Virus record (IMG/VR): IMGVR_UViG_3300027985_001318
Location: 159,651 to 223,650 of that record
Direction: 5' to 3' (one strand)
DNA: 64,000 bases
Shown here: in pieces, positions 1-63,038 of the stretch
Numbering within the stretch: position 1 is the stretch's first letter
Layout: every line of letters begins with the position of its first letter
Translations under genes and position numbers: made by a program
The notes under the pieces: model-generated
What the model was told of the DNA's origin: nothing
The model's database searches: none
The model's input: only the letters and a program-made list of their open reading frames with translations

Positions 1-994
1 GACCAACAACGAACTCCTGATGGCGAAGGGCGTGGACATCTGGAAAGAATGGGCTTTGCCTGAAGAGCAAACCCGGGAAGCTACGGCCCCTAAGAGCCGC
101 GTTCGTTTGATGACCGAACTTGGCCGAGCCAAGGGTGTTTCTGCCGTACGTGCAAACGCCATGATCGGTGAGAAACTTAACATTCTGGAAAGTCAGGGGC
201 TTGGGGAAGAAGCTTTCCATGAATGGCTGCGCGGTGAAGGCGTTGAGCCTTTCATATTGACCACTCACCCCAAAGGCGACTTGGGTCCGATCTACGGCGC
301 TCAGTGGCGTAATTTCGCTGGAGTGGATCAGCTCCGTGACTTGATCCGTGATCTGCGTCTGCGGCCGTTTTCTCGCCGTCACGTAGTTAGTGCGTGGAAT
401 CCCGCAGTACTGCCGGACGAGACTGCAACACATCAGGATAACATCCTGAATGGTCGCGCCGTGCTGGCATCCTGCCACGCGTTCTTCCAATGTCACTGCC
501 GTAAGCTGAACCTGCATCGTCGTGCTGAGATTGCTGATCGTTATCGGCTGTCAGTTGATGTTGATGACTTTATCAAAGTCGGTGCTGATGGCGACGATGA
601 GGAACGTTTCGATGGTTCTTTCGAGAAACTCGAAAACATCCTGGATGCGGCCGGCGTACCGAAGATTGGTCTTAGCCTTCAGATGTACCAGCGCTCCTGT
701 GATATCTGCTGTGGCGCGCGGTTTAATATTGCGTTTTATTCAGCACTGACCATGATGCTCGGTCGCGAACTGAACTACCATCCCGAAGAGTTCATTCACG
801 ATATCGGTAACTTGCACATCTACAAGAACCATATCGCCAATGCCCGCGAGCATTTGAAGCGCACACCTAAGCCGTTGCCGAAACTGCGGATCGCTGTACC
901 GGCAGGTACGAGTATTTTCAACATGAAATACGAGGACTTCAAACTCGAAGGTTATGACCCGATGCCGAAGATCGACTACCCGGTATCTATTTAA
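1..994 (+). CDS. thyA: Thymidylate synthase, 5'-truncated by window edge
   Basis: Motifs GVDIWKEWA, DLGPIYGAQWR, SRRHVVSAWNP, catalytic CH, YQRSCD..FN, HIYKNH; frame is open back to base 2 (TNNELLMAKG). Confidence 0.93.
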   Translation, partial: TNNELLMAKGVDIWKEWALPEEQTREATAPKSRVRLMTELGRAKGVSAVRANAMIGEKLNILESQGLGEEAFHEWLRGEGVEPFILTTHPKGDLGPIYGAQWRNFAGVDQLRDLIRDLRLRPFSRRHVVSAWNPAVLPDETATHQDNILNGRAVLASCHAFFQCHCRKLNLHRRAEIADRYRLSVDVDDFIKVGADGDDEERFDGSFEKLENILDAAGVPKIGLSLQMYQRSCDICCGARFNIAFYSALTMMLGRELNYHPEEFIHDIGNLHIYKNHIANAREHLKRTPKPLPKLRIAVPAGTSIFNMKYEDFKLEGYDPMPKIDYPVSI

Positions 995-16736: not shown

Positions 16737-16770
16737 AAAGATTTTTTAAAACCTATATCACTCTAGTGGT
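16737..16770 (+). promoter_or_regulatory. Putative early phage promoter (variant)
   Basis: AAACCTATATCACTCTAGTG upstream of the ligase. Confidence 0.5.
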
Positions 16771-16822
16771 TAAAGATTACGTTGCGATACAATTTATACT
16801 ACACAGAGATGTGGAGGTGGAG

Positions 16823-18865
16823 ATGACTGAATTGATGAAGAAGCAGGAAGAGCTTACTAAGCTCTTGAAAAAGCACTGTCGTGCGTACTATCGCGACGAC
16901 AACCCCGAACTCTCTGACTGCGAGTACGACCAGCTCTTTCTGGACCTTAAGGCAATGGAAGCAGCTACCGGTGTAGTTTTTCCCGGCTCGCCAACTCAAA
17001 CTGTTGGTGGTGACTGTTTGGAGTTCTTCGAAGAAGTCCGACATAACACCCCGATGCTCTCACTAGATAACGTCTTCAACTCAGAAGAACTGTTGAAGTG
17101 GCTGAACGGACTTAAAGCTACTATTGGTCGAGACGTTGAGTACTTGATCGAACCTAAGCTGGATGGCTTGGCTTTGCGAGTACTTTATCGTAATGGTATC
17201 CTGGAAACCGCAGCTACTCGCGGTGACGGGGTCGTTGGTGAGAACGTAACTGCCAACGCCAGAACGATCTGGAACCTACCGCAACGTTTGGATACCGACA
17301 ACCCACCTGGGGTTTATGAGGTCTCTGGTGAAGTAGTGATGTCCAAGAAACGTTTCAATGCACTTAACCAAGCTCGGGTTGAACGCAGTGAAAAACCGTT
17401 TGCTACTTGCCGCAATGCTGCAGCCGGTAGTATTCGTCAGCTGGACTCTAAAGTAGCAGCTAGTCGCGGTTTGGCGTTTTACGCCTACCAAGTATCTAGC
17501 GGTACAACCAGACTGGAGCATGTGGCGGCGATGGAGGAGGCTGCGTCGTATGGCTTCGAGTTAGCTCTCGATGTAGTTAAACTCCCCATGCGCGATCAAC
17601 TGGGTTGCGCTGATCTGGAAGACTTGCTGGAACTGTGGAATGGCGTCCGCAAAGAAGCGGCGTACGATACTGATGGCTTGGTTTTCAAAGTCAACGAGTT
17701 CGTTGATCAGGAACAGCTGGGTTTCACTGGCCGCGTGCCGCGCTGGGCCATTGCCTACAAGTTTCCGGCCAAAGAAGCTACCAGTAAGTTGCGGACCGTA
17801 GACTTTCAAGTTGGACGTACTGGAGTTATCACTCCGGTAGCTAACTTCGATACGGTGAACATCGACGGAGTTCTGGTAAGCCGCGCGACTATTCATAACG
17901 CTGACGAGTTGGCTCGTCTCGGTATTCGTTATGGCGATATGTTGGTAGTACACCGTGCTGGTGAAGTTATTCCGCAGATACTCAGACGGTACGCAGATCC
18001 TTCAGTGGCGGAGTTGGGAGCGCCGGTGGTGTTTCCGACGAACTGTCCGGAGTGCGGTAGTTTGCTGGAACGAATCCCTGGCGAAGCTGAAACCTACTGT
18101 CCGAATAGCAACGGTTGTCCGGCACAGCAACAGAACTCTCTGATCCATTTCGCTTCACGAAAAGCTCTTGATATCCAGGGCTTCGGTGACCGTACGGTAG
18201 AGACGTTCTACAACGAAGGTCTGTTGGAGACGGTGACTGATTTCTTCACCATCTTCGAAGATGAAGATAAGAAAGCCATCATTCGCGATTTACCTGGTTT
18301 CGGACAGCGTAGTATCGATGTGCTGGAGAAATCCGTCTATCGCGTACAGTCCGATAAACTGGAGCTTGGTAGACTGATCTACGCTCTGGGAATCCATAAC
18401 GTAGGTTGGTCCACTGCCCGCGACTTCGCTCGCTGGGTACTTGCCAACGATCGTTTCGAAGATCTGTTCAAGGTAGGTGGTTTTACAGCTGAAGAGCTGA
18501 TGACCATTAAAGACATTGGTCCAGTAACTTCTCTGGCTATTGTCGACTACCTCAAACGTCCTGAGAACATAGCGATCCTGAAAGACCTGCGTGAGAAGCT
18601 GAATATCTCCTTGGTTAAGGCGGAAGTACAGCCTCTGGCCGGTAAGGTGATTGTTATCACTGGATCGTTTGTCCAAGTGGATCGAGAAGTACTTAAGAAC
18701 CACCTGGAATCGCTGGGGGCTAAGGTAAGTGGTTCCGTGTCCGGTAAAACCGATTTCTTGTTGGCCGGTAACGACGGCGGTAAAAAGCTCAGTGAGGCTT
18801 TGACGCTTGGCGTGACGATACTGCAAGGTGAGGAGTTGTTTAAGCAGGACTGGTGGGTGTTCTGA
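16823..18865 (+). CDS. ligA: NAD-dependent DNA ligase
   Basis: PMLSLDN, EPKLDG adenylation motif, TRGDG, PRWAIAYKF, Cys4 zinc finger, HhH, BRCT; GGAGG RBS. Confidence 0.96.
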   Translation: MTELMKKQEELTKLLKKHCRAYYRDDNPELSDCEYDQLFLDLKAMEAATGVVFPGSPTQTVGGDCLEFFEEVRHNTPMLSLDNVFNSEELLKWLNGLKATIGRDVEYLIEPKLDGLALRVLYRNGILETAATRGDGVVGENVTANARTIWNLPQRLDTDNPPGVYEVSGEVVMSKKRFNALNQARVERSEKPFATCRNAAAGSIRQLDSKVAASRGLAFYAYQVSSGTTRLEHVAAMEEAASYGFELALDVVKLPMRDQLGCADLEDLLELWNGVRKEAAYDTDGLVFKVNEFVDQEQLGFTGRVPRWAIAYKFPAKEATSKLRTVDFQVGRTGVITPVANFDTVNIDGVLVSRATIHNADELARLGIRYGDMLVVHRAGEVIPQILRRYADPSVAELGAPVVFPTNCPECGSLLERIPGEAETYCPNSNGCPAQQQNSLIHFASRKALDIQGFGDRTVETFYNEGLLETVTDFFTIFEDEDKKAIIRDLPGFGQRSIDVLEKSVYRVQSDKLELGRLIYALGIHNVGWSTARDFARWVLANDRFEDLFKVGGFTAEELMTIKDIGPVTSLAIVDYLKRPENIAILKDLREKLNISLVKAEVQPLAGKVIVITGSFVQVDREVLKNHLESLGAKVSGSVSGKTDFLLAGNDGGKKLSEALTLGVTILQGEELFKQDWWVF

Positions 18866-24222: not shown

Positions 24223-24675
24223 ATGAACAACAACCAACACCTGTTCCAAAGCTGGGTTTCTGTCAACATCAACGCCGAAAGCCAGGAAGCTGCTAAGAGC
24301 AACCCTCTGATCGAAGGTGGGCTCCAATGTAGCTTCCAGACCCGTTACAAGGATCTGGAACGTGTAACAGTTACCAACGCGTTCAGCATCAATATGCTGA
24401 GCGAAACCAGTAACCTTAAGTTCATCCAACTGGATGAGTCTGAGGCTAAGTGGGTAGTTAGTAATTTTGGGCACGATAGCGCTGTCGGTCACGCCGATAC
24501 CGCCGCCGTGCTAAGCAGTGTACTCGGCATCGAAGTGCCGATGAACCGCACCACGTTGCAGATGCAGCGCGGTACTGCCCTGCTGGTTGGGCAGTACAAA
24601 GGTCCTCGGTTAGCCGAGGGCACGATGGAGCTTCCGGAAGGGGCTTCCATCGAATGGTGGTTGGTGCGCCACTAA
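24223..24675 (+). CDS. DUF1874/AcrIII-1-family viral ring nuclease (anti-type III CRISPR)
   Basis: NAFSINML, SAVGHADTA (catalytic His), NR and GPRLAEG motifs characteristic of the family. Confidence 0.85.
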   Translation: MNNNQHLFQSWVSVNINAESQEAAKSNPLIEGGLQCSFQTRYKDLERVTVTNAFSINMLSETSNLKFIQLDESEAKWVVSNFGHDSAVGHADTAAVLSSVLGIEVPMNRTTLQMQRGTALLVGQYKGPRLAEGTMELPEGASIEWWLVRH

Positions 24676-24770: not shown

Positions 24771-25082
24771 ATGTCCCAATTCCGGACTTTGGTAGAAAAC
24801 TCCCTGGCCAATACCGGCCTGGGAGCGCGCGAGTGCTTGGGCAACCCCCAGGTACTCAACGACTTTATCCGTAAAGTCGTGTTGGCCATAAAGACCCCGT
24901 GTCTTTATGGGGCTGACGAAAGCTCTGCTATCTACAGCATTGACTGTGGTAAGAGCTTCGTCATGATGTCTTCAGGGCACTGCGATCTCGGTCGCGACGC
25001 CCTCGACATCAGCACTTTCGACTTCGAGTACGAAGTCGAAAGCTGCCTCGACAGCATCGCTGAAGGTCGAGACGAAGACTAA
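24771..25082 (+). CDS. Hypothetical acidic protein
   Basis: 103 aa, AAGGAG RBS, flanked by hairpins. Confidence 0.7.
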   Translation: MSQFRTLVENSLANTGLGARECLGNPQVLNDFIRKVVLAIKTPCLYGADESSAIYSIDCGKSFVMMSSGHCDLGRDALDISTFDFEYEVESCLDSIAEGRDED

Positions 25083-25127
25083 AAGAATGGGGAGGGTCAC
25101 CTCCCCATTCTTTTTTTACTTAAACCA

Positions 25128-25206: not shown

Positions 25207-25938
25207 ATGGAATTCGAAAGCATTAAAGGTTTTTCTGTGGCTCAGGAAAAAGGGTTTTGTTTTGATATCGACAATATTCACAATATCGATATCTTTGCTA
25301 AGCATCAGTCGATTGCTACAGTAAGTGCGTTCCAAAACAAGCTTAGCTGGATTTTACATTGGCGGAATGTTTATTTTGATAAAACCTGTAACATTCAACA
25401 TTACTTCAAACAAACTGGTAATATTGGCTCATTGCTATCCAGTTATCGAGAACTTCCTAAGTTGTGTGTCGAATCACTCAACGTGCAAGAATGTTTGATG
25501 ATCGAGGCTGTCCGTAAAATCAGATCTTTGTTTGACGATGAAATCGTTCATCGACTTTACGCCACAGTCAGCGATGGAGACATAACCCCTTTACGTCTCC
25601 AGACTTTCCAAGACGGGGAACTGACCTGCGACTGCGTTTATCAGACAAGTAGTGAACGCTGGTTCTATTATCTCGACGAACCCACTGCTATATACGAGTT
25701 GATGTGCCGTAGCAATGGCTTTGTTCGAGCAATTAGCAAAGAGGGTCTACAAGTAGGACATATCGCCGAAATGATCGGTGAAAAACTTATCGAGCAGTGT
25801 CCTGAATTTGAAACATTGAATTACAGGAAAGGTAAGGGCGAACGTATCGTCAAGTCCATCCGTAAGGCTATCGGTTCTGCCTTCTGGCACCAGAACTCTC
25901 TCGCTTCCAAACTCCATGACTTCTGTCAACGTCTTTGA
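25207..25938 (+). CDS. Hypothetical protein
   Basis: 243 aa, AAGGAAA RBS. Confidence 0.75.
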   Translation: MEFESIKGFSVAQEKGFCFDIDNIHNIDIFAKHQSIATVSAFQNKLSWILHWRNVYFDKTCNIQHYFKQTGNIGSLLSSYRELPKLCVESLNVQECLMIEAVRKIRSLFDDEIVHRLYATVSDGDITPLRLQTFQDGELTCDCVYQTSSERWFYYLDEPTAIYELMCRSNGFVRAISKEGLQVGHIAEMIGEKLIEQCPEFETLNYRKGKGERIVKSIRKAIGSAFWHQNSLASKLHDFCQRL

Positions 25939-25965: not shown

Positions 25966-26385
25966 ATGAAAGATCTCGAGCAGCCGCCACTGCTTGGCAT
26001 GGCGGTCTTTAACGCCATTTACAGCTGGCTGGCCGATAAAGGGTATCGTGTCTACGTCTATGTTCCCGATAGCCGTGCTGAAGGTGTGATGGTCCCTGAG
26101 CGCTCCGTGGGCGAGAACGGCAGTATAACGCTCTGCATAAGCCCGAACGCAGTCCTGAAGTTCAGCGTAACGGTTTACGGCATTGGATTCGAGGGTCGCT
26201 TTAATGGCATGGTCTCTCACGTTTCTTTGCCGTGGGGTAGTTTCAGCATTGGCACGCCGGATGCGGACATCAGACCATTCCCATTCCCGGCTTTTCCGTT
26301 CTATGAATTTAACGGAAAAGAACCAATCATTCCCGGTGAAGAACAGCCGCCGAAAGGCAAGCCCAAGCTGTCCGTAGTTAAATAA
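25966..26385 (+). CDS. sspB: SspB-like ClpXP adaptor
   Basis: AIYSWLAD, ITLCISPNAV, FEGRFNG core; C-terminal KPKLSVVK resembles the SspB ClpX-binding LRVVK. Confidence 0.85.
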   Translation: MKDLEQPPLLGMAVFNAIYSWLADKGYRVYVYVPDSRAEGVMVPERSVGENGSITLCISPNAVLKFSVTVYGIGFEGRFNGMVSHVSLPWGSFSIGTPDADIRPFPFPAFPFYEFNGKEPIIPGEEQPPKGKPKLSVVK

Positions 26386-26402
26386 CAGGAGTCGATACGG
26401 AA

Positions 26403-27764
26403 ATGGATATTTTTCAACAACTCATTCAACAAATCACGAACTTGGCCGGAGACAACCAGTTCCTCTCCGGGGGTCTGGCCGTTTACGCCATGGGGATGCT
26501 GACCTATCTGGCGCGCAGAGTACCGTCTGCGCTGATTGGCTGGTTCCAACAGCGTTTTATCGCCAGGATGACTTTCGATAACAGTTCTTGGGAGCGGAGG
26601 CAGATTCAAGAACAATTTGACAAATGGTACGGTAGCACCAAATGGATGGCTGGAGTTCGTAACTTCCGGATGATGGCTGATAATGGTAAGGTGGTGATAT
26701 CTCCCGGCGGCTCCTTGAATTTCTTCATGCTTGGTCGCCGTCTGTTCTGGTTTCGGACCAGTCGAGACAATAGTGAGAGAATGAGTCAGGAAACTGTTTA
26801 TGTAACTGACGTTGCCACGTTCTCTCTCTGGGGCAGCCATAAGGTATTTGATAGCTTTGCACGTCAGTTCTCTGAGACTTTCGATAAAAAGCTTGACGAC
26901 GATTCGGTCTGGGTAATGGGTGAGCAGAACGGCGATTGGTTCCGCCGCCAACGCCTCATGCGACGTAAATGGGATAAAGTAGCTTATAGCCATAAGGTGC
27001 GTGAAAGCATCGATAAAGCTATCAATAACTTTATCGTGAACAAAGATAGCTTTCGGGAGTTAGGGCTCTCTCGTAAACTGACGTTTTTGTTCCACGGCGA
27101 GCCTGGTACTGGCAAGACAGATTTGGCTAGGGTCATCGGCTCCATCACTGGCTTCGATATCTACCCTGTTTCACTTGAAAGCCGTTCGTTGAATAACTTA
27201 GAGCGGGCGTTCTGGGGGATGTCTGACGAAGCTATCGTTCTTTTCGAAGATATTGATAGTTTCGTAGGGAAGCGTGCTCTTGATAACGCCAATGAACAGG
27301 AAAGTCAGGTAGAAGTTCCCCTAGGTAAAAACAATCCTACTTCCAAAACCCAACTGAGTCTCTCATCTATCCTCAATATGCTGGATGGTGTTGCTCAATT
27401 GGAAAACAAGATTGTTATCATTACCACCAACGCCATCAAGGACCTAGATGTAGCGCTTTATCGTAAGTCTCGTGTTGACGTCCTGATGGAAATCAAACGC
27501 TTTGACTCGAACGAGGTTTGGGATTATGTAGGTCGTCTGTTCCCGGAACTCAAGCTCGAGTATAAAATTGCTCTGGTACCGGTAGCTGGCTGTGAGCTCA
27601 GTGAGCTGTTGAGAGAACATCTCTACGATGCGGAGGGTTTCGTTAACAGTCTCTGCGAACGTTATGCTGTGCGTGAGGTTAGTCGAGATTTTGTTAATAA
27701 ATGGGGCTGTGACGATACCGAAGTTCTCAGCTTCATTAAGGAACCAGTTGCTATCGACAAATAG
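26403..27764 (+). CDS. BCS1-like membrane-anchored AAA+ ATPase
   Basis: N-terminal TM; Walker A GEPGTGKT, Walker B IVLFEDID, LSSILNMLDG, TTN..LDVALYRKSRVD. Confidence 0.8.
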   Translation: MDIFQQLIQQITNLAGDNQFLSGGLAVYAMGMLTYLARRVPSALIGWFQQRFIARMTFDNSSWERRQIQEQFDKWYGSTKWMAGVRNFRMMADNGKVVISPGGSLNFFMLGRRLFWFRTSRDNSERMSQETVYVTDVATFSLWGSHKVFDSFARQFSETFDKKLDDDSVWVMGEQNGDWFRRQRLMRRKWDKVAYSHKVRESIDKAINNFIVNKDSFRELGLSRKLTFLFHGEPGTGKTDLARVIGSITGFDIYPVSLESRSLNNLERAFWGMSDEAIVLFEDIDSFVGKRALDNANEQESQVEVPLGKNNPTSKTQLSLSSILNMLDGVAQLENKIVIITTNAIKDLDVALYRKSRVDVLMEIKRFDSNEVWDYVGRLFPELKLEYKIALVPVAGCELSELLREHLYDAEGFVNSLCERYAVREVSRDFVNKWGCDDTEVLSFIKEPVAIDK

Positions 27765-27824
27765 GATGTAAGAAACTAAGAGGAGGGCGAAAGCCCTCCT
27801 CTTTTTTTGCTTAAACATATCCCA

Positions 27825-43344: not shown

Positions 43345-45405
43345 ATGAGCAGCATCTTGAAACGATTGCTAGGTACTATTGAAGTAGAAGAGAAACGCGG
43401 TTTCATTAGCGTTACTGGCTTCAATATGCCAAATACTGGGAGACTCATAACTGAGTTATGGAGTACATCCAGGGTGAACGCGCACATGTTCACCAAGTTC
43501 TCGAAACGTGAATTCAGGTTCGAGAGCTTCTTTGCTATTGAGGTACGCTATATAATCGAGAAGCTTCTCGAGAAGTGTCCTCGCCAGGTGAACCAAAGAG
43601 CTTTACGTAGAATCGTCGAGCTACTGAACGAAAACACTTGGCTGAAAAATATCGAATCGGATCACAAACCGATCCTTAACCGCGCTAGACTGAATGACTT
43701 TACCGTCAAGCCTTTAGATTCTCAGCTCGAGTTTCTGAACACTTACGATACGTTGGTGCCGAAACTTAATTTGAAAGGCTATATGTTGGCTAGCCCAGCA
43801 GGCACCGGTAAAACTCTGACGTCTCTGTTTACTGCAAGATGTATCGAAGCGGACGCTGTGATTGTGATCTCCCCTAACAATGCCGTGCGTAGAGTCTGGG
43901 GCGCTACTTTTGATAGTCGCTTCAAAAACAAACCGGAATATTGGATTTCTGATCAATCTGGAGTACCGGCTAAAGCTTACGATTACGCAGTGTTCCATTA
44001 CGAAGCCTTGGATCGCGCTCTGGTTTATGCTGACTACTTGGTTAAAGAAACCAATAAGAAAGTGTTCATTATCCTCGACGAGTGTCATAACTTCAACAAC
44101 GAGGAATCTCTTCGTACTCAGAAATTCGTTGATCTCTGCAAGTTAACCAAACCACTTGGGATCATCTGGATGTCTGGTACTCCGATTAAGGCGGTGGGTA
44201 GTGAGTGCGTGCCGTTCTTGCGCACTGTCGATCCTCTCTTTACCGATAGTGCTGCAGTGGCTATGTACAAGATCTTCGGGAAGTCAGCTTCCCGAGCTAC
44301 CGACATTCTCGCCCATCGGATTGGTCACATTAGCTTCAAGATAGAGAAGGCTACTGTGGTAGCCAACGTCTCCGATACGGTAGAATATAAGTTTGGTTTC
44401 AAAGGAGCCGAGCGCTTTACTTTGCAGGTAATCAGAGAAGAGATCGTTTCGTTTATCATTGAGCGAAGCGAGTATTATCGCCGTGAACGGCCGATGTTCC
44501 AGGCCATTTACGACAAGGCTATCGCTGAGCATAAAACCAGGATAGAAAGAAACCCTGCCCTACAGAGGGATTTCTTGAAGTATCAGTCTTACGTACGTAC
44601 TATCTCTCGTGGATTCGATCCAGTGCAACACAAAGAGATGGCTAAGTTCTGCAACATCTACGAGAAAACTCAGATTATTCCATACCTCTCTAAGGAGCTC
44701 AGAAAGCCGTTTGGGGAGGCTCGGTCGGTAATCAAGTACGTACAGCTCAAAATACGTGGAGAGGCTTTAGGACGCGTTCTAGGCCGCCGTAGAATCGAAT
44801 GCTTTGTAGAGATGGCGCAGCATGCTGACTTGACTGGTTATATTGATAACTCTGAAAAGAAAACAGTGATTTTCACGAGTTATGTCGAGGTATTGGAACA
44901 GTTGCAAAGAAAGGCAGTGGCCGATGGCTACAAGCCGCTAGTGGTCTATGGAGCTACTAACAAGAACCTCGGCTCTATTATTCAGCAGTTCGACAGAGAT
45001 CGCGACGCTAACCCGTTGATCGCCACCTACGATTCTCTTTCTACTGCCGTGCCATTGATCATGGCTAACACTGCGATTATGTTCAACCAGCCCTTCAGGC
45101 AACATGAGATCGAGCAAGCTCAAGCTCGTATCGATCGTCTAGATCAAGACTCTCCAGTACATTTCGTAAATGTACTGCTAGATACCAATGGGGTGGAAAA
45201 CATTTCTACTCGTAACTTGGATATAGTGGAGTGGTCTCGCCAGCAGGTTGATGAAATCATGGGTAATGGCGACGGTATTGATAACGTTACTGTCGAATCT
45301 TTCTTGGCTGAGTTTGGTCTTTCCTTCTCAACTGAAGCTATTGATTTGTCTAGTTTTAGAAAGAAGATCGATAGCTCTACCTCATTCTTCTATTTCAAGG
45401 AGTAA
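43345..45405 (+). CDS. SF2 (SNF2/DExH-type) helicase
   Basis: PAGTGKT, DECH, SGTP, QAQARIDR. Confidence 0.9.
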   Translation: MSSILKRLLGTIEVEEKRGFISVTGFNMPNTGRLITELWSTSRVNAHMFTKFSKREFRFESFFAIEVRYIIEKLLEKCPRQVNQRALRRIVELLNENTWLKNIESDHKPILNRARLNDFTVKPLDSQLEFLNTYDTLVPKLNLKGYMLASPAGTGKTLTSLFTARCIEADAVIVISPNNAVRRVWGATFDSRFKNKPEYWISDQSGVPAKAYDYAVFHYEALDRALVYADYLVKETNKKVFIILDECHNFNNEESLRTQKFVDLCKLTKPLGIIWMSGTPIKAVGSECVPFLRTVDPLFTDSAAVAMYKIFGKSASRATDILAHRIGHISFKIEKATVVANVSDTVEYKFGFKGAERFTLQVIREEIVSFIIERSEYYRRERPMFQAIYDKAIAEHKTRIERNPALQRDFLKYQSYVRTISRGFDPVQHKEMAKFCNIYEKTQIIPYLSKELRKPFGEARSVIKYVQLKIRGEALGRVLGRRRIECFVEMAQHADLTGYIDNSEKKTVIFTSYVEVLEQLQRKAVADGYKPLVVYGATNKNLGSIIQQFDRDRDANPLIATYDSLSTAVPLIMANTAIMFNQPFRQHEIEQAQARIDRLDQDSPVHFVNVLLDTNGVENISTRNLDIVEWSRQQVDEIMGNGDGIDNVTVESFLAEFGLSFSTEAIDLSSFRKKIDSSTSFFYFKE

Positions 45406-59717: not shown

Positions 59718-60109
59718 AATTTCCTCCACCAGCTCTTCGGCCCAAACCAGACCACGCTGTAATACATCGCGTAAAGATATTTGTTGGAAATACCACAACG
59801 TTTAAGGTTTGTTTTAAACGTAGCTCTGGCCTCTTCGACTGGAAAACTTATGTCATAAACACACATGTAGTCGTGAATAATGACTGCCGGCAAATAACGA
59901 CCAAAGCTCGGGACGAGGTTTTGAAAGAGACGGGGCACGGTGGCCCCGTCGGTGATAAACCCAGCAGGTATCGTAACCTCTGGGCTGTAGAGATCCATCG
60001 ATAACTTAGCTTTCTTTTTGGAGCGCAAGAAAACCAATGGAATCTCTTCTGGGAACTCGAAGACGTCTATGCTTTTACCCTCCAGGCTACAGCCATCTAT
60101 CAGCAGCAC
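59702..60109 (-). CDS. DUF1353-family protein
   Basis: IPAGFITDGATVPR..GRYLPAVIIHDYMC. Confidence 0.8.
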   Translation of the reverse strand: MLLIDGCSLEGKSIDVFEFPEEIPLVFLRSKKKAKLSMDLYSPEVTIPAGFITDGATVPRLFQNLVPSFGRYLPAVIIHDYMCVYDISFPVEEARATFKTNLKRCGISNKYLYAMYYSVVWFGPKSWWRKLWHKS

Positions 60110-63038
60110 TTACGATCTCAACGCTAACTGAGATACTACCGGCCGCCGTACCAGTTTTGATATTGCCATCACTACCCATGGCAGTATTACGATATACGTA
60201 GAGACCACCAGGGAACAACGCCAACCGGCACACCTCACCGTAAGAACCTGCTCCGATAACTACACAACCTTCAGTCCCGGCAGTAGATCCTGATGGAGAA
60301 GCCAATTGCAACCCAGTAGCGTCACCGGTGGGAAATACGCCGTATTTAGGGTTAGATCTACCAGTTATGCTACCGAAAGACAACATACCAGCGAAGTAGC
60401 TCCACCCACCAGTAGACGTACTACCACCCCACTTTACTTTAGCGTGATAAAACGAACCGTCACCGATGACGTTGGTGACGAAGGTCCACTCCCCAGCCAT
60501 TGCGGTAACAGAGCCAGAAAACTTAACGCGCCGGGCTAGCATCTTGTTCAACATCTGATAAACGCCACGCACTGTAGCGTACTGGAGACTTTGGGTCGGG
60601 TAGCCATCTGGGCTGTCTAGATAATCGTACATGTCGCTATTACTAGCCTGAGCGACGTTGACCACACTACCCAATCCCACTTGAGCCTTAGTAACCGAGT
60701 GCGGGTTGTCAGTTCTGGATACGTGAGCAGAAACTGTGCTCCACCCTACGTTGTTCAGGTAACGGGCAATCGCCTGGAAGGTACGCAGTGGGGTCATGTA
60801 GAGCCCGTTACTGGTACCAGCCTCGGCGTCGGTCTGAGCTGCGATGCCGTAGTTAGCGACCGAGCCCAGACCAACCTGCGCCTTAGTAACCGAGTGGGGG
60901 TTACTGGTGTTGCTCAAGTGGGCGGTTACACTACTCCACCCTACGTTGTTCAGGTAACGGGCAATCGCCTGGAAGGTACGCAGTGGGGTCATGTAGAGCC
61001 CGTTACTGGTACCAGTCTCGGCGTCGGTCTGAGCTGCGATGCCGTAGTTAGCGACCGAGCCCAATCCCACTTGAGCCTTAGTAACCGAGTGCGGGTTGTC
61101 AGTTCTGGATACGTGAGCAGAAACTGTGCTCCACCCTACGTTGTTCAGGTAACGGGCAATCGCCTGGAAGGTACGCAGCGGGGTCATGTAGAGCCCGTTA
61201 CTGGTACCAGTCTCGGCGTCGGTCTGAGCTGCGATGCCGTAGTTAGCGACCGAGCCCAATCCTACATGTGCTTTAGTGGTGCCATGTGGATTGCTGGTAT
61301 TGTTGATGTGGTTTACTGCGGACGTCAGCACTGAAGCAGCGTCGGTACGGCCTAGATGTGCCGTTACGGCATAGTAGGTCGACCACGGAGTCATGTAGAC
61401 CGCATTGCTAGCACCGGAAGTCATGACTTGCGCTTGAGCCTGACTTGCTAACCCGTAGTTTTGCACAGAACCCAACCCAACGTCGGCCTTGGTGGTGCCA
61501 TGCGGGTTGGTGGAGATGCTCTGGTTAATGTGGGTAGCGAAATCATTGTAAACGCGTTTGTCAATCGCTTGCAATACCCGCAGCGGCGTCATGTACTTAA
61601 CGTTGGACGAGCTTCCGGTGGAAGTGACTTCAGCCTCGGCCTGGGTAGCAATGCCATAGTTAAGTACGTTACCTAGTCGGTTAATCACATACTCGACAAG
61701 CCTCAGCGGAGTAATATACGCCGCGTTGGAAGCCGTGGATGTGGTTTGTGCCGCAGTTACTTGGGCGCTGGTAGCAATCCCATAGTTTTCCACACTACCC
61801 AGACCCACCTGCGCCTTGGTGACGCCATGCGGGTTGCTGGTGTTGCTAACGTGTGCTTGTAACTGAGTCCCGCCACGAGCATCGATCATTTCAGCCACAC
61901 GGCGAATAGTCATGAATTTATTCGTCGGTAACGTAGAAGTCGCTGCAGTTGCCTGCGCTTCGGCTTGGGATGCCGTGGCGTAGTTATCGACATCAGAAAG
62001 ACCAACCTGAGCCTTAGTAACTGAGTGCGGGTTATCGAGTCGATTAACGTGACTGGAGATCAAATCTCCAGCTAAGGTATTGATAGCTTGCTTGGTCAAA
62101 TACGGGGTCATGTACTTGAGATTAGACGCGCCAGCGGTAGCTTCGGCTACGGTAGCAATGCCGTAGTTTTCCACACTACCCAATCCCACTTGCGCCTTAG
62201 TAACCGAGTGCGGGTTGTCGGTCCTGCTACTATGGCTAGAAACTATCCCACCAGCCAGTACCTGAATTGCAGCAAACGTGTTGTACGGGGTCATAAACAA
62301 AGTTTGCGACAGACCGGCGCTGGCTTCGGCGACAGTGGCAGTTGCAAAGTTATCTACCAGATCCAAACCGATTTGGGCTTTGGTTACTTTGTGGGGGTTC
62401 GCAAAATCTCCCAAATGTAACGTAAGTGCCTCAGCCTGGTCGTCGATAAGTTGCTGTAGTTCAACACGTAAGTTAGATATCCGCTGTCTGAGCAGTTCGT
62501 GGTCGTAGTAGTCGCCATGCATGATCGCGCCAGTCATGCGATCAATGGCAGCTATCATGTACTCGAACCCGTAAAAGTCATCCAGGTCGTGGTAGTGAGG
62601 TGATGGCGGGAAAGCCTCCAGCTTACCGATAATGTCACCCCAGGCGATAGCGCGATCATCAATCTCAAGTGCAGCCACAAGTTCTTGGATAACACTAACA
62701 GAGCTACTGAAACCGCCACCAACTACTTGGTAGTCTACCAGCAGTTCACCTTCGATATCGGCATTGGTGATCAGCACCGCGGCACAGATTTCCTGACCAG
62801 CTACCAAGGTGGCTTCTTGATACTGATGGAGGGCAATGTAATCGACATGCGCTATCAGAGCTTCGCCATCGGAGGCTTTACGAATAACGAGAGACTTGGT
62901 GTAAAAAGGACCGTAGTCCAAAGCAAACCCTCGAGAAGTGTCTCGAGGGACCGTATGAGATTCATTACCGATAGCGTTGCTGGAAGCACTACCGGTAAGA
63001 TCTAACGGATATTTGATAATGATTGGGGTCGCACCCAT
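60087..63038 (-). CDS. Long tail fibre protein
   Basis: Many H..NPHxVTKAQVGLGxVxNY..YMTP repeats; GGAGG RBS. Confidence 0.85.
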   Translation of the reverse strand: MGATPIIIKYPLDLTGSASSNAIGNESHTVPRDTSRGFALDYGPFYTKSLVIRKASDGEALIAHVDYIALHQYQEATLVAGQEICAAVLITNADIEGELLVDYQVVGGGFSSSVSVIQELVAALEIDDRAIAWGDIIGKLEAFPPSPHYHDLDDFYGFEYMIAAIDRMTGAIMHGDYYDHELLRQRISNLRVELQQLIDDQAEALTLHLGDFANPHKVTKAQIGLDLVDNFATATVAEASAGLSQTLFMTPYNTFAAIQVLAGGIVSSHSSRTDNPHSVTKAQVGLGSVENYGIATVAEATAGASNLKYMTPYLTKQAINTLAGDLISSHVNRLDNPHSVTKAQVGLSDVDNYATASQAEAQATAATSTLPTNKFMTIRRVAEMIDARGGTQLQAHVSNTSNPHGVTKAQVGLGSVENYGIATSAQVTAAQTTSTASNAAYITPLRLVEYVINRLGNVLNYGIATQAEAEVTSTGSSSNVKYMTPLRVLQAIDKRVYNDFATHINQSISTNPHGTTKADVGLGSVQNYGLASQAQAQVMTSGASNAVYMTPWSTYYAVTAHLGRTDAASVLTSAVNHINNTSNPHGTTKAHVGLGSVANYGIAAQTDAETGTSNGLYMTPLRTFQAIARYLNNVGWSTVSAHVSRTDNPHSVTKAQVGLGSVANYGIAAQTDAETGTSNGLYMTPLRTFQAIARYLNNVGWSSVTAHLSNTSNPHSVTKAQVGLGSVANYGIAAQTDAEAGTSNGLYMTPLRTFQAIARYLNNVGWSTVSAHVSRTDNPHSVTKAQVGLGSVVNVAQASNSDMYDYLDSPDGYPTQSLQYATVRGVYQMLNKMLARRVKFSGSVTAMAGEWTFVTNVIGDGSFYHAKVKWGGSTSTGGWSYFAGMLSFGSITGRSNPKYGVFPTGDATGLQLASPSGSTAGTEGCVVIGAGSYGEVCRLALFPGGLYVYRNTAMGSDGNIKTGTAAGSISVSVEIVSAADRWL
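60670..61260. repeat. Three near-identical 195-bp coding repeats inside the tail fibre
   Basis: Unit starts at 60670, 60865 and 61060; each encodes 65 aa. Confidence 0.85.

What the first reader, a model, noticed from the sequence alone, without database searches (positions are those of the whole stretch)
26403..27764. BCS1-like membrane AAA+ ATPase
Seen: an N-terminal TM (NQFLSGGLAVYAMG), a middle region (SPGG..FF..GRRLFWF.R) and an AAA cassette with EDID and LS.ILN.LDG. Established: this architecture resembles mitochondrial Bcs1, which moves a folded protein across a membrane. Inference: a phage-encoded membrane translocase or extractor, possibly removing host membrane defence proteins or exporting phage proteins.
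Basis: partly seen in the sequence, partly recalled or inferred. Interest (0 to 1): 0.62.

Follow-up and report, generated by a model that had tools for sequence, protein, structure and literature searches.

The report
Jumbo-phage BCS1-family AAA+ ATPase
The gene is a real but very divergent phage copy of the mitochondrial Bcs1 ATPase, a type already noted in jumbo phages, encoded by an uncultured nucleus-forming jumbo phage and co-transcribed with an SspB-like protease adaptor; what it acts on is still unknown.

Summary
It belongs to the BCS1 family, not just to AAA ATPases in general.

- **Sequence:** its clade aligns end to end with phage homologues that carry Pfam BCS1_N (hhalign probability 100, E 6e-60). 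The joint profile hits yeast Bcs1 full length (E 6e-111, against 5e-53 for the best other AAA protein).
- **Structure:** the full AlphaFold model matches Bcs1 structures at Z 20-24. The N-terminal part folded alone has mouse Bcs1 as its only hit above Z 5 among 48,161 PDB representatives (Z 10.4, 2.8 Å, 116 residues).
- **Catalytic motifs:** Walker A, Walker B, sensor 1 and the arginine fingers are intact. Pore loop 1 is missing, as in Bcs1.
- **Caveats:** the direct Pfam BCS1_N score is below threshold (11.5 bits, cut-off 28.1). The presumed membrane helix is only weakly hydrophobic.
- **Setting:** the genome is a 223.6-kb phage that encodes chimallin. The gene closes a three-gene unit bounded by terminators: a conserved unknown ORF, an SspB-like adaptor ending in LSVVK, and the ATPase.
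- **Prior knowledge:** BCS1 orthologues in jumbo phages were described in 2021. The phiKZ homologue gp286 cross-links to ribosomes.

This is a new, divergent member of a known kind; its substrate and function are untested.

The parts
25081..25114 (+). Intrinsic terminator (15-bp stem followed by a T-run) that closes the upstream gene and marks the 5' boundary of the three-gene unit
   Evidence: sequence read
25207..25938 (+). ORF243, first gene of the unit, function unknown. A 270-aa homologue sits in the same position in related metagenomic contigs L083 and L084
   Evidence: BLASTP E 1e-18, 26% identity to L083:1896-2705. No Pfam, PHROG, PADLOC or Atlas lead
25966..26385 (+). SspB-like adaptor protein (139 aa): substrate-binding domain at about residues 14-92, a Pro-rich linker, and a C-terminal ...KPKLSVVK tail
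   Evidence: Profile against PDB SspB structures, E 4e-10. PHROG 8945, E 7e-8. Pfam SspB, E 1.4e-4, below the gathering score. The L-x-[VI]-[VI]-K terminus is conserved in the relatives
26387..26391 (+). Shine-Dalgarno AGGAG, 11 nt before the ATG of the BCS1-like gene. Only 17 nt separate the SspB-like stop codon from this start
   Evidence: sequence read
26403..27764 (+). BCS1-family AAA+ ATPase gene (453 aa, P0001)
26457..26513 (+). Residues 19-37: uncharged helix at the position of the Bcs1 membrane helix. The N-flank is acidic and the C-flank basic (RR at 38-39), which implies N-out, C-in. Hydrophobicity is marginal
   Evidence: helix 19-37 in the model of the N-terminal part
26559..26960 (+). 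Residues 53-186: Bcs1-specific beta-rich middle domain
   Evidence: Folded alone: mouse Bcs1 6ukp_A at Z 10.4, rmsd 2.8 Å, 116 aligned, model 33..158 to chain 29..156, next hit Z 4.9. hhalign to homologues carrying BCS1_N
27075..27497 (+). Residues 225-365: AAA nucleotide-binding domain. Walker A is GEPGTGKT (232-239), Walker B is IVLFEDID (278-285), sensor 1 is TTN (341-343) and the arginines are R354 and R357. A variable, low-confidence insert lies at about 286-318
   Evidence: (invariant columns)
27507..27665 (+). Residues 369-421: helical lid domain
   Evidence: Structural alignments to Bcs1 run to model residue about 423 and chain residue about 419. Pfam AAA_lid_BCS1 is detected in 8 of the 20 aligned homologues but not in this protein
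27778..27803 (+). Intrinsic terminator (11-bp GC-rich stem, GAAA loop, T-run) 14 nt after the stop codon. It is one of 9 copies of a stereotyped hairpin in the window

Best explanation
The gene encodes a catalytically competent BCS1-family AAA+ ATPase of an uncultured chimallin-encoding (nucleus-forming) jumbo phage.

Shown: it has the three-part Bcs1 build, namely an N-terminal helix, a Bcs1-specific beta-rich domain and an AAA module with lid. Walker A, Walker B, sensor 1 and the arginine fingers are intact, and pore loop 1 is absent. It is the last gene of a unit bounded by terminators, after a conserved unknown ORF and an SspB-like adaptor.

Inferred by analogy with Bcs1: it forms a ring, probably a heptamer. 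The ring would be tethered N-out, C-in to a membrane, either the host inner membrane or a membrane derived from it. It would use ATP-driven opening and closing of a large chamber to move or remodel a folded protein client, and would not thread an unfolded chain. The client is unknown.

My odds: BCS1-family membership about 0.95; a ring ATPase acting on folded clients without threading about 0.55; truly membrane-integral in this clade about 0.55.
For: - Profile-profile: the close clade (A3) against phage homologues carrying BCS1_N (A4) gives probability 100, E 6e-60, 385 columns, residues 10-420. Fourteen of the 20 aligned homologues hit Pfam BCS1_N, best E 1e-36.
- The joint profile hits yeast and mouse Bcs1 full length, E 6e-111 and 8e-100. 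The best non-Bcs1 AAA protein scores 5e-53.
- The AlphaFold model has pLDDT 79. The top 12 Foldseek hits are all full-length Bcs1, E down to 3.5e-24.
- VIA-align gives Z 20-24 over model residues 6-423, against about Z 16 for other AAA proteins, which align on the AAA part only.
- The N-terminal part folded alone has Bcs1 as its only hit with Z>=5 among 48,161 chains: Z 10.4, 2.8 Å.
- Catalytic columns G232, G235, G237, K238, E282, D283, D285 and R354 are invariant; N343 and R357 are nearly invariant.
- The alignment to Cdc48 shows a 7-residue deletion where its pore-loop-1 segment lies.
- Flanking charges fit an N-out, C-in topology.
- Bcs1 orthologues in jumbo phages were proposed earlier, on sequence grounds, to be folded-protein translocases (PMC7824862).
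Against: - The direct Pfam BCS1_N score is 11.5 bits against a cut-off of 28.1. The N-terminal 225 residues alone find nothing in the PDB by phmmer.
- The presumed membrane helix is weak: Kyte-Doolittle 1.19, and 1.43-1.45 in the five closest relatives aligned, below the usual 1.6. The clade could therefore be peripheral or soluble.
- phiKZ gp286, a homologue, co-fractionates with 70S ribosomes and cross-links to the ribosomal stalk, not to a membrane complex (PMC10449902).
- Oligomeric state, localisation, ATPase activity and client were not tested, and no client candidate emerged.
Confidence: 0.6

Rival explanations
1. It is a soluble or only peripherally bound Bcs1-fold remodeller that acts on the host translation machinery. 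It would dock on the ribosomal stalk to alter or protect translation during infection, and would not translocate anything across a membrane.
For: phiKZ PHIKZ286 is the homologue in phiKZ (profile E 1.6e-58 and 1.4e-27 for the two pieces). It was predicted from SEC-MS to sit with the 70S ribosome and cross-linked to rplL, rplK and rplJ (PMC10449902). The N-terminal helix of the window's clade is weakly hydrophobic.
Against: Membrane proteins and large rings can co-migrate with ribosomes. The cross-links could come from nascent chains or from membrane-bound ribosomes. Most phage homologues keep a clearly hydrophobic N-terminal helix (Kyte-Doolittle 1.6-2.0). gp286 is only distantly related to this protein and carries an insert of about 107 aa.
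Confidence: 0.18
2. The three-gene unit is a proteolysis-targeting module. The BCS1-like ring extracts or presents a host or phage protein at the membrane, and the SspB-like adaptor carries it through its C-terminal LSVVK tail to host ClpXP for degradation. This would resemble a split version of FtsH.
For: The SspB-like gene lies 11-17 nt upstream of the ATPase gene in the window and in the contigs that carry the two relatives looked up, inside one unit bounded by terminators. SspB homology is solid (E 4e-10 against SspB structures). The L-x-[VI]-[VI]-K terminus is conserved even in the relative whose binding domain is internally deleted. From memory, it resembles the ClpX-binding tail of E. 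coli SspB. The phage has no ClpX or ClpP of its own, so a host protease would be the target.
Against: The pairing is confined to this clade. No SspB-like ORF lies within about 6 kb of the ATPase gene in the 80 more distant viral loci. Klebsiella jumbo phages carry the SspB-like gene away from any BCS1-like gene. The complex prediction gave no support, which is not evidence either way. An SspB-like protein in Erwinia phage RAY is described with no link to such an ATPase (PMC10299810).
Confidence: 0.1
3. It is a virion-assembly chaperone. It would act close to the membrane during prohead assembly, binding folded proteins and loading them into the head, as Iyer et al. proposed for phage BCS1 orthologues.
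For: The proposal is published (PMC7824862). The family occurs widely in large phages with complex heads: 180 phage records, 110 of them full length, spanning Pseudomonas, Klebsiella, Serratia, Ralstonia, Erwinia, Brevundimonas, Caulobacter and Tenacibaculum phages.
Against: In this window the gene lies among small non-structural genes of unknown function and next to an SspB-like gene, not in a structural module. There is no experimental support. The phiKZ interactome links gp286 to ribosomes, not to capsid proteins.
Confidence: 0.1
4. It is a generic classical-clade AAA ATPase (Cdc48-, FtsH- or proteasome-like), and the Bcs1 resemblance is superficial.
For: With the single sequence, the top PDB hits by phmmer are Cdc48 and AFG2 over the AAA region. 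Some GenBank homologues are annotated 'FtsH' or 'cell division protein'.
Against: Profile, Foldseek and VIA searches all place Bcs1 clearly above every other AAA protein. The N-terminal domain matches only Bcs1. There is no protease domain and no second AAA ring.
Confidence: 0.02

Closest known systems
Mitochondrial Bcs1 / BCS1L (yeast 6sh3, mouse 6ukp and 6uks): heptameric AAA translocase of the folded Rieske Fe-S protein
   Same: The domain order and folds match: N-terminal helix, Bcs1-specific domain, AAA module and lid. Model residues 6-423 align to chain residues 1-419 at Z 20-24, and the middle domain alone gives Z 10.4. The catalytic motifs are intact and there is no pore-loop-1 motif. 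The flanking charges imply the same N-out, ATPase-in topology.
   Different: Identity to Bcs1 structures is only about 17-21%. Pfam BCS1_N and AAA_lid_BCS1 do not detect this protein directly. The membrane helix is much less hydrophobic. Compared with the homologues carrying BCS1_N, roughly 20 extra residues follow Walker B, within the low-confidence stretch at about 286-318. It is encoded by a phage of bacteria; I did not look for a Rieske client or a bc1 assembly context, and oligomer size is unknown.
Jumbo-phage BCS1 orthologues (Iyer et al. 2021, PMC7824862; PHROG 7485; e.g. phiKZ gp286, Noxifer, RSL2, phiTE, Salmonella phage Munch 'mitochondrial chaperone')
   Same: It is the same family with the same full-length architecture: PHROG 7485 E 4e-85, and tblastn over 88-94% of the length in the 40 records listed. 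Like many of these phages, the host genome encodes chimallin.
   Different: Identity to every deposited phage homologue is at most 29%. Its own clade, 47-52% identical, is known only from metagenomes. That clade has a weaker N-terminal helix and a clade-specific link to an SspB-like gene. phiKZ gp286 has an insert of about 107 aa at the post-Walker-B position.
Bacillus subtilis YjoB (7w42): bacterial AAA ATPase with a Bcs1-like N-terminal domain
   Same: The whole model aligns at Z 17.9 over residues 54-422.
   Different: The score is clearly lower than for Bcs1. The N-terminal domain folded alone gives only Z 4.3-4.6 to YjoB, against 10.4 to Bcs1.
SspB, the ClpXP adaptor (for the upstream neighbour, not the ATPase)
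   Same: The neighbour's residues 14-92 match the SspB substrate-binding domain (E 4e-10). It ends in LSVVK, which resembles the ClpX-binding tail of E. coli SspB as I recall it. SspB-like proteins are already reported in phages pf16 and RAY.
   Different: It scores below Pfam's gathering threshold (22.4 against 27 bits). It is short (139 aa). It is paired with a BCS1-like ATPase, which I did not find reported.

Membership tests
BCS1 family (Bcs1/BCS1L-type AAA ATPases) | Bcs1-specific domain between the N-terminal helix and the AAA module | tested here: met
   hhalign to homologues carrying BCS1_N: probability 100, E 6e-60, covering residues 10-420. The joint profile aligns to yeast Bcs1 residues 36-449. 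The domain folded alone gives Bcs1 6ukp_A at Z 10.4, 2.8 Å, 116 residues, with the next hit at Z 4.9. The direct Pfam BCS1_N scan of the single sequence is sub-threshold (E 0.29, 11.5 against 28.1 bits). That is a limit of detection, not an absent domain.
BCS1 family | Single N-terminal transmembrane helix, N-out and ATPase-in | tested here: inconclusive
   A 19-residue uncharged helix (residues 19-37) lies at the homologous position, with an acidic N-flank and a basic C-flank. Its Kyte-Doolittle mean is 1.19, and 1.43-1.45 in the five closest relatives aligned, against 1.56-1.97 in other phage homologues. No dedicated topology predictor was available.
BCS1 family | Classical-clade AAA module with Walker A, Walker B, sensor 1 and arginine fingers | tested here: met
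   Pfam AAA, E 2.5e-14. GEPGTGKT at 232-239, IVLFEDID at 278-285, TTN at 341-343, and R354 and R357. These columns are invariant or nearly invariant across the 20 homologues.
BCS1 family | Bcs1-type helical lid after the AAA core | tested here: met
   Structural alignments to Bcs1 extend to model residue about 423 and chain residue about 419. Pfam AAA_lid_BCS1 is found in 8 of the 20 aligned homologues but not in this sequence.
BCS1 family | No aromatic pore-loop-1 motif (a non-threading ATPase) | tested here: met
   The alignment to Cdc48 shows a 7-residue deletion in the query where the Cdc48 pore-loop segment lies. That Bcs1 itself lacks the motif is from my own knowledge of the 2020 Bcs1 structures.
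BCS1 family | Homo-heptameric ring | not testable with these tools
   A heptamer of 453 aa exceeds the size limit of the complex predictor. It needs multimer modelling, or SEC-MALS or cryo-EM.
BCS1 family | ATP-driven translocation of a folded client across a membrane | not testable with these tools
   This is a biochemical property and no client was identified.
SspB adaptor family (upstream gene 25966..26385) | SspB substrate-binding domain | tested here: met
   Profile of three orthologues against PDB SspB chains, E 4e-10 to 2e-9, residues 14-92. PHROG 8945, E 7e-8. Pfam SspB, E 1.4e-4, 22.4 bits, below the gathering score of 27.
SspB adaptor family | C-terminal ClpX-binding tail | tested here: inconclusive
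   The terminus is ...KPKLSVVK, conserved as L-x-[VI]-[VI]-K in the relatives. The likeness to the E. coli SspB tail is recalled from memory, and binding was not tested.
Chimalliviridae (the genome that carries the gene) | Encodes the nuclear-shell protein chimallin | tested here: met
   phiKZ gp54 finds a 667-aa frame at G000:C1:76483-77826, E 6.8e-28. The reciprocal tblastn hits 115 phage records, including the 'nuclear shell protein' of phage Eowyn.
Known anti-phage defence ATPases (PADLOC: IetA, TRIP13) | Full-length match to a defence-system model | tested here: not met
   Only residues of about 182-256, the Walker A region, match (E 4e-11 at best).

The most novel reading that the evidence does not exclude
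ORF243, the SspB-like adaptor and the BCS1-like ATPase form one dedicated machine in a nucleus-forming phage. A Bcs1-type ring would move or extract folded proteins at a membrane, for example the membrane vesicle that early chimallivirus infections are reported to form around the injected DNA (from memory), or the host inner membrane. The SspB-like protein would serve as its adaptor or as the hand-over to host ClpXP. This would be the first bacterial-virus use of the Bcs1 folded-protein translocation principle with a defined partner.
Probability: 0.08. Interest if true: 0.8.

Novelty: new member of a known kind. Interest (0 to 1): 0.35.

Why it matters
Bcs1 is one of very few machines known to carry a folded protein across a membrane. 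Nobody has tested why many large phages, including the model phage phiKZ (gp286), keep a copy. This locus adds three things. It shows by structure that even a clade invisible to Pfam BCS1_N keeps the Bcs1-specific domain. It shows that the membrane helix is degenerating in that clade. It also offers a conserved gene partner (the SspB-like adaptor) as a lead to function. The finding itself, a BCS1-like ATPase in a jumbo phage, is already in the literature, so its value is as a pointer for experiments on tractable homologues and not as a discovery.

Tried and rejected
- **DNA search.** Megablast of the gene against 50,697 phage records found no match.
- **N-terminal sequence search.** phmmer of residues 1-225 alone against the PDB found nothing, even at E 10. 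Profiles and folds were needed to see the domain.
- **Complex prediction.** The SspB-like protein with the ATPase scored 0.00 (mark 0.32). The verdict was 'no answer', so it counts neither for nor against binding.
- **Defence systems.** PADLOC gave only Walker-A-region hits (IetA, TRIP13). There is no full-length membership, and nothing for the two upstream genes.
- **ORF243.** No Pfam, PHROG, PADLOC or Atlas lead; the Atlas model has pLDDT 0.35.
- **PHIKZ285.** I asked whether this upstream neighbour of phiKZ gp286, also reported at the ribosome, is homologous to ORF243. It is not (E 5.5).
- **SspB-like ORFs elsewhere.** An HMM search through all ORFs of the 80 more distant viral loci found none, so the pairing is specific to this clade. 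In Klebsiella phage MJ359 the SspB-like gene is not next to a BCS1-like gene.
- **Phage-encoded protease.** The phage genome has no ClpP (PF00574) or ClpX (TIGR00382).
- **Promoter motif.** TATATTAC, a phiKZ early-promoter-like octamer recalled from memory, occurs 4 times against 1.7 expected. Six of 100 shuffles reach that count, so it is not significant and no temporal class is assigned.
- **Large protein search.** The search of protein representatives was not used, because the family scans and the word search settled the family.
Full report
**Observation.** The window holds an ATG-started ORF at 26403..27764 on the + strand, 453 aa. An AGGAG lies 11 nt upstream. Pfam AAA matches residues 229-365 at E 2.5e-14. 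PHROG 7485, of unknown function, matches end to end at E 4e-85. The gene is real.

**Whose genome.** The window is bases 159651-223650 of a 223,650-bp IMG/VR virus record with direct terminal repeats, rated 100% complete. Nearly all ORFs are on one strand.
- The helicase at 43345..45405 is about 42% identical to those of Klebsiella, Serratia, Erwinia and Xanthomonas jumbo phages.
- phiKZ gp54, the nuclear shell protein chimallin, finds a 667-aa frame elsewhere in the genome at E 6.8e-28.
- That frame in turn hits 115 phage records, including an annotated 'nuclear shell protein', at no more than 28% identity among the records listed.

The carrier is therefore a deep-branching, uncultured chimallin-encoding jumbo phage.

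**Is it Bcs1-like or just AAA?** With the single sequence the evidence is ambiguous. Pfam BCS1_N reaches only 11.5 bits (E 0.29, cut-off 28.1), although at the right place, residues 31-163. phmmer against the PDB ranks Cdc48 and AFG2 first, though the mouse Bcs1 alignment already extends back to residue 98. Residues 1-225 alone find nothing.

Relatives resolve the question.
- The word search returned ten metagenomic proteins at 47-52% identity, plus a 27%-identical protein that carries BCS1_N, AAA_lid_BCS1 and AAA.
- A scan of IMG/VR gave 80 loci, from which I cut full-length ORFs.
- Of the 20 aligned proteins, 14 hit Pfam BCS1_N (best E 1e-36). None of the six from the window's own clade do at E 0.01.
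- Profile against profile, the window's clade aligns with the BCS1_N-positive set at probability 100, E 6e-60. The alignment spans 385 columns from residue 10 to 420, so it includes the N-terminal helix and the middle domain.
- The joint profile hits yeast Bcs1 at E 6e-111 (profile 4-411 to chain 36-449) and mouse Bcs1 at 8e-100. The best non-Bcs1 AAA protein scores 5e-53.

**Structure.** AlphaFold2 with this alignment gives mean pLDDT 79.
- The model shows a long N-terminal helix, a beta-rich domain (about residues 53-186), the AAA core and a helical lid. Low confidence is confined to residues 301-315 and the C-terminal tail.
- The first twelve Foldseek hits are full-length Bcs1 structures (E 3.5e-24 to 4.6e-17, about 380-444 aligned columns). 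The isolated Bcs1 AAA domain follows, then B. subtilis YjoB, then other AAA proteins.
- VIA-align gives Z 20-24 for Bcs1 with 313-391 aligned residues over model 6..423, YjoB at Z 17.9, and about Z 16 for other AAA proteins aligned on the AAA part only.
- To remove the pull of the AAA domain, I folded residues 1-192 alone (pLDDT 73) and compared the model with 48,161 PDB representatives without a Foldseek prefilter. The only hit above Z 5 is mouse Bcs1: Z 10.4, rmsd 2.8 Å, 116 residues, model 33..158 to chain 29..156. The next hit has Z 4.9.

The Bcs1-specific domain is therefore present, and BCS1-family membership is well supported.

**Catalytic features.**
- Walker A (G232, G235, G237, K238), Walker B (E282, D283, D285) and R354 are invariant across the 20 homologues. 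Sensor-1 N343 and R357 are nearly invariant. The protein should hydrolyse ATP.
- In the alignment to Cdc48, the query has a 7-residue deletion where the Cdc48 pore-loop-1 segment lies. That fits a Bcs1-type enzyme that does not thread its substrate.
- The segment after Walker B (about residues 286-318) is low in confidence. Compared with the BCS1_N-positive homologues it carries roughly 20 extra residues.
- phiKZ gp286 carries about 107 extra residues at the same site.
- By my own inference, this site corresponds to the pore-loop-2 region facing the central chamber. It may be where client specificity varies.

**The membrane question.** Residues 19-37 form an uncharged helix, with D17 before it and R38-R39 after it. 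The N-flank has no K or R and the C-flank has four, which implies N-out, C-in as in Bcs1. The helix is poorly hydrophobic, however. Its Kyte-Doolittle mean is 1.19, and 1.43-1.45 in the five closest relatives aligned. The other 14 homologues score 1.56-1.97. Membrane anchoring is thus plausible but not secure for this clade, and no dedicated topology predictor was available.

**Neighbourhood.**
- A strong terminator lies at 25081-25114 and another at 27778-27803, 14 nt after the stop codon. They bracket three co-oriented genes: ORF243 (25207..25938), a 139-aa gene (25966..26385) and the ATPase. Only 17 nt separate the last two.
- The 139-aa product is SspB-like: PHROG 8945 E 7e-8, Pfam SspB E 1.4e-4 below threshold, and a three-sequence profile against SspB crystal structures at E 4e-10 over residues 14-92.
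- It ends in ...KPKLSVVK. The relatives end in TLTVVK, TLMIVK and TLTVIK. From memory, this resembles the LRVVK tail by which E. coli SspB docks on the ClpX N-domain.
- The phage has no ClpX or ClpP of its own.
- The SspB-like gene sits directly upstream of the ATPase gene in all three contigs that carry one ~50%-identical relative. In the contigs of another relative it is an internally deleted 74-aa form that keeps both termini.
- ORF243 has a homologue in the same position in two of those contigs (E 1e-18).
- The pairing does not extend further. No SspB-like ORF lies in the flanks of the 80 more distant loci. In Klebsiella phage MJ359 the SspB-like gene sits apart from any BCS1-like gene.
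- A complex prediction for the pair returned no support, which is uninformative.

**What is already known.**
- Iyer, Anantharaman, Krishnan, Burroughs and Aravind (2021, PMC7824862) reported BCS1 orthologues in all three major jumbo-phage groups. They proposed that these bind and translocate folded proteins during membrane-proximal head assembly.
- tblastn finds the family in 180 phage records, 110 at full length and all below 30% identity to this protein. A few are already annotated 'mitochondrial chaperone' or 'complex III assembly protein'.
- The phiKZ homologue is PHIKZ286. A co-fractionation and cross-linking study placed it and its neighbour PHIKZ285 with the 70S ribosome, with gp286 linked to the stalk proteins (PMC10449902). 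PHIKZ285 is unrelated to ORF243.
- SspB-like proteins in phages have been noted for pf16 and for the chimallivirus RAY, where the protein is cytoplasmic.
- I found no paper that links Bcs1 with chimallin or tests a phage BCS1 homologue.

**Interpretation.** Family membership and catalytic competence are shown. The following are inferred by analogy: a ring, probably a heptamer, tethered by its N-terminus; ATP-driven handling of a folded client without threading; and co-expression with an SspB-like adaptor. The client is unknown. The rivals I keep are:
- a soluble, ribosome-associated remodeller, supported by the phiKZ data and the weak helix;
- a hand-over module that feeds host ClpXP through the SspB-like protein;
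- the published virion-assembly idea.

PADLOC similarity is limited to the Walker A region.

**Verdict.** The function remains open. This is a divergent new member of a family already recognised in jumbo phages. The modest additions are the structural proof for a clade that Pfam misses, the degenerate membrane helix, and the clade-specific SspB-like partner.

Noticed in passing
window 25966..26385 (+): A phage-encoded SspB-like adaptor (139 aa) with a conserved C-terminal L-x-[VI]-[VI]-K tail, and no phage ClpX or ClpP. It is likely to dock on host ClpX. One relative (L085:1017-1241) has lost the core of the binding domain but keeps both termini.
   Followed up: yes
window 2386, 16258, 24714, 27780, 31644, 38911, 42666, 53218, 56979 (22-nt sites): A stereotyped palindromic hairpin, GAGGAGGGC-(TTTC or GAAA)-GCCCTCCTC, occurs 9 times at gene ends (0 expected in 100 shuffles). 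The copy checked in detail (27778-27803) is followed by a T-run. It appears to be a phage-wide, near-identical intrinsic terminator, used with either loop (TTTC or GAAA).
   Followed up: partly
G000:C1:76483-77826 (outside the window; locus L088): A chimallin (nuclear shell protein) homologue in a 667-aa open frame, at most 28% identical to those of the cultured phages listed. The genome is therefore a deep-branching nucleus-forming jumbo phage of only 223.6 kb.
   Followed up: partly
window 24223..24675 (+): A 150-aa protein with a STIV B116-like domain (Pfam PF08960, E 8e-11; PHROG 5063, E 1.5e-17), a family first seen in an archaeal virus.
   Followed up: no
window 16766..18865 (+) and L082:836-2887: A full-length NAD-dependent DNA ligase (PHROG 3869, E 2e-184). 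In the related contigs the ligase and a DHFR gene lie a few genes upstream of the SspB-like and BCS1-like pair, so this region is partly syntenic across the clade.
   Followed up: no
window 60087..63038 (-): A 983-aa protein with many repeated matches to tail-fibre and virion-structural PHROGs (phrog_2163, E 2e-208, 8 stretches). It lies on the opposite strand to most genes, in a region of higher GC (0.53).
   Followed up: no
window 9349, 27839, 53269 (+): The octamer TATATTAC, which I recall as the phiKZ early-promoter core, lies in three intergenic gaps. One is 75 nt downstream of the ATPase stop codon, ahead of the next gene. The overall count is not significant (4 against 1.7 expected).
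   Followed up: partly
NC_004629.1 259685-261211 (locus L093:3686-5212), phiKZ PHIKZ286: The phiKZ BCS1-like homologue has an insert of about 107 aa between Walker B and the sensor-1 strand, at the site where the window's protein has a shorter variable insert. tblastn also splits several listed Pseudomonas jumbo-phage matches (PA1C, PS119XW) into two pieces, consistent with a similar insert.
   Followed up: partly
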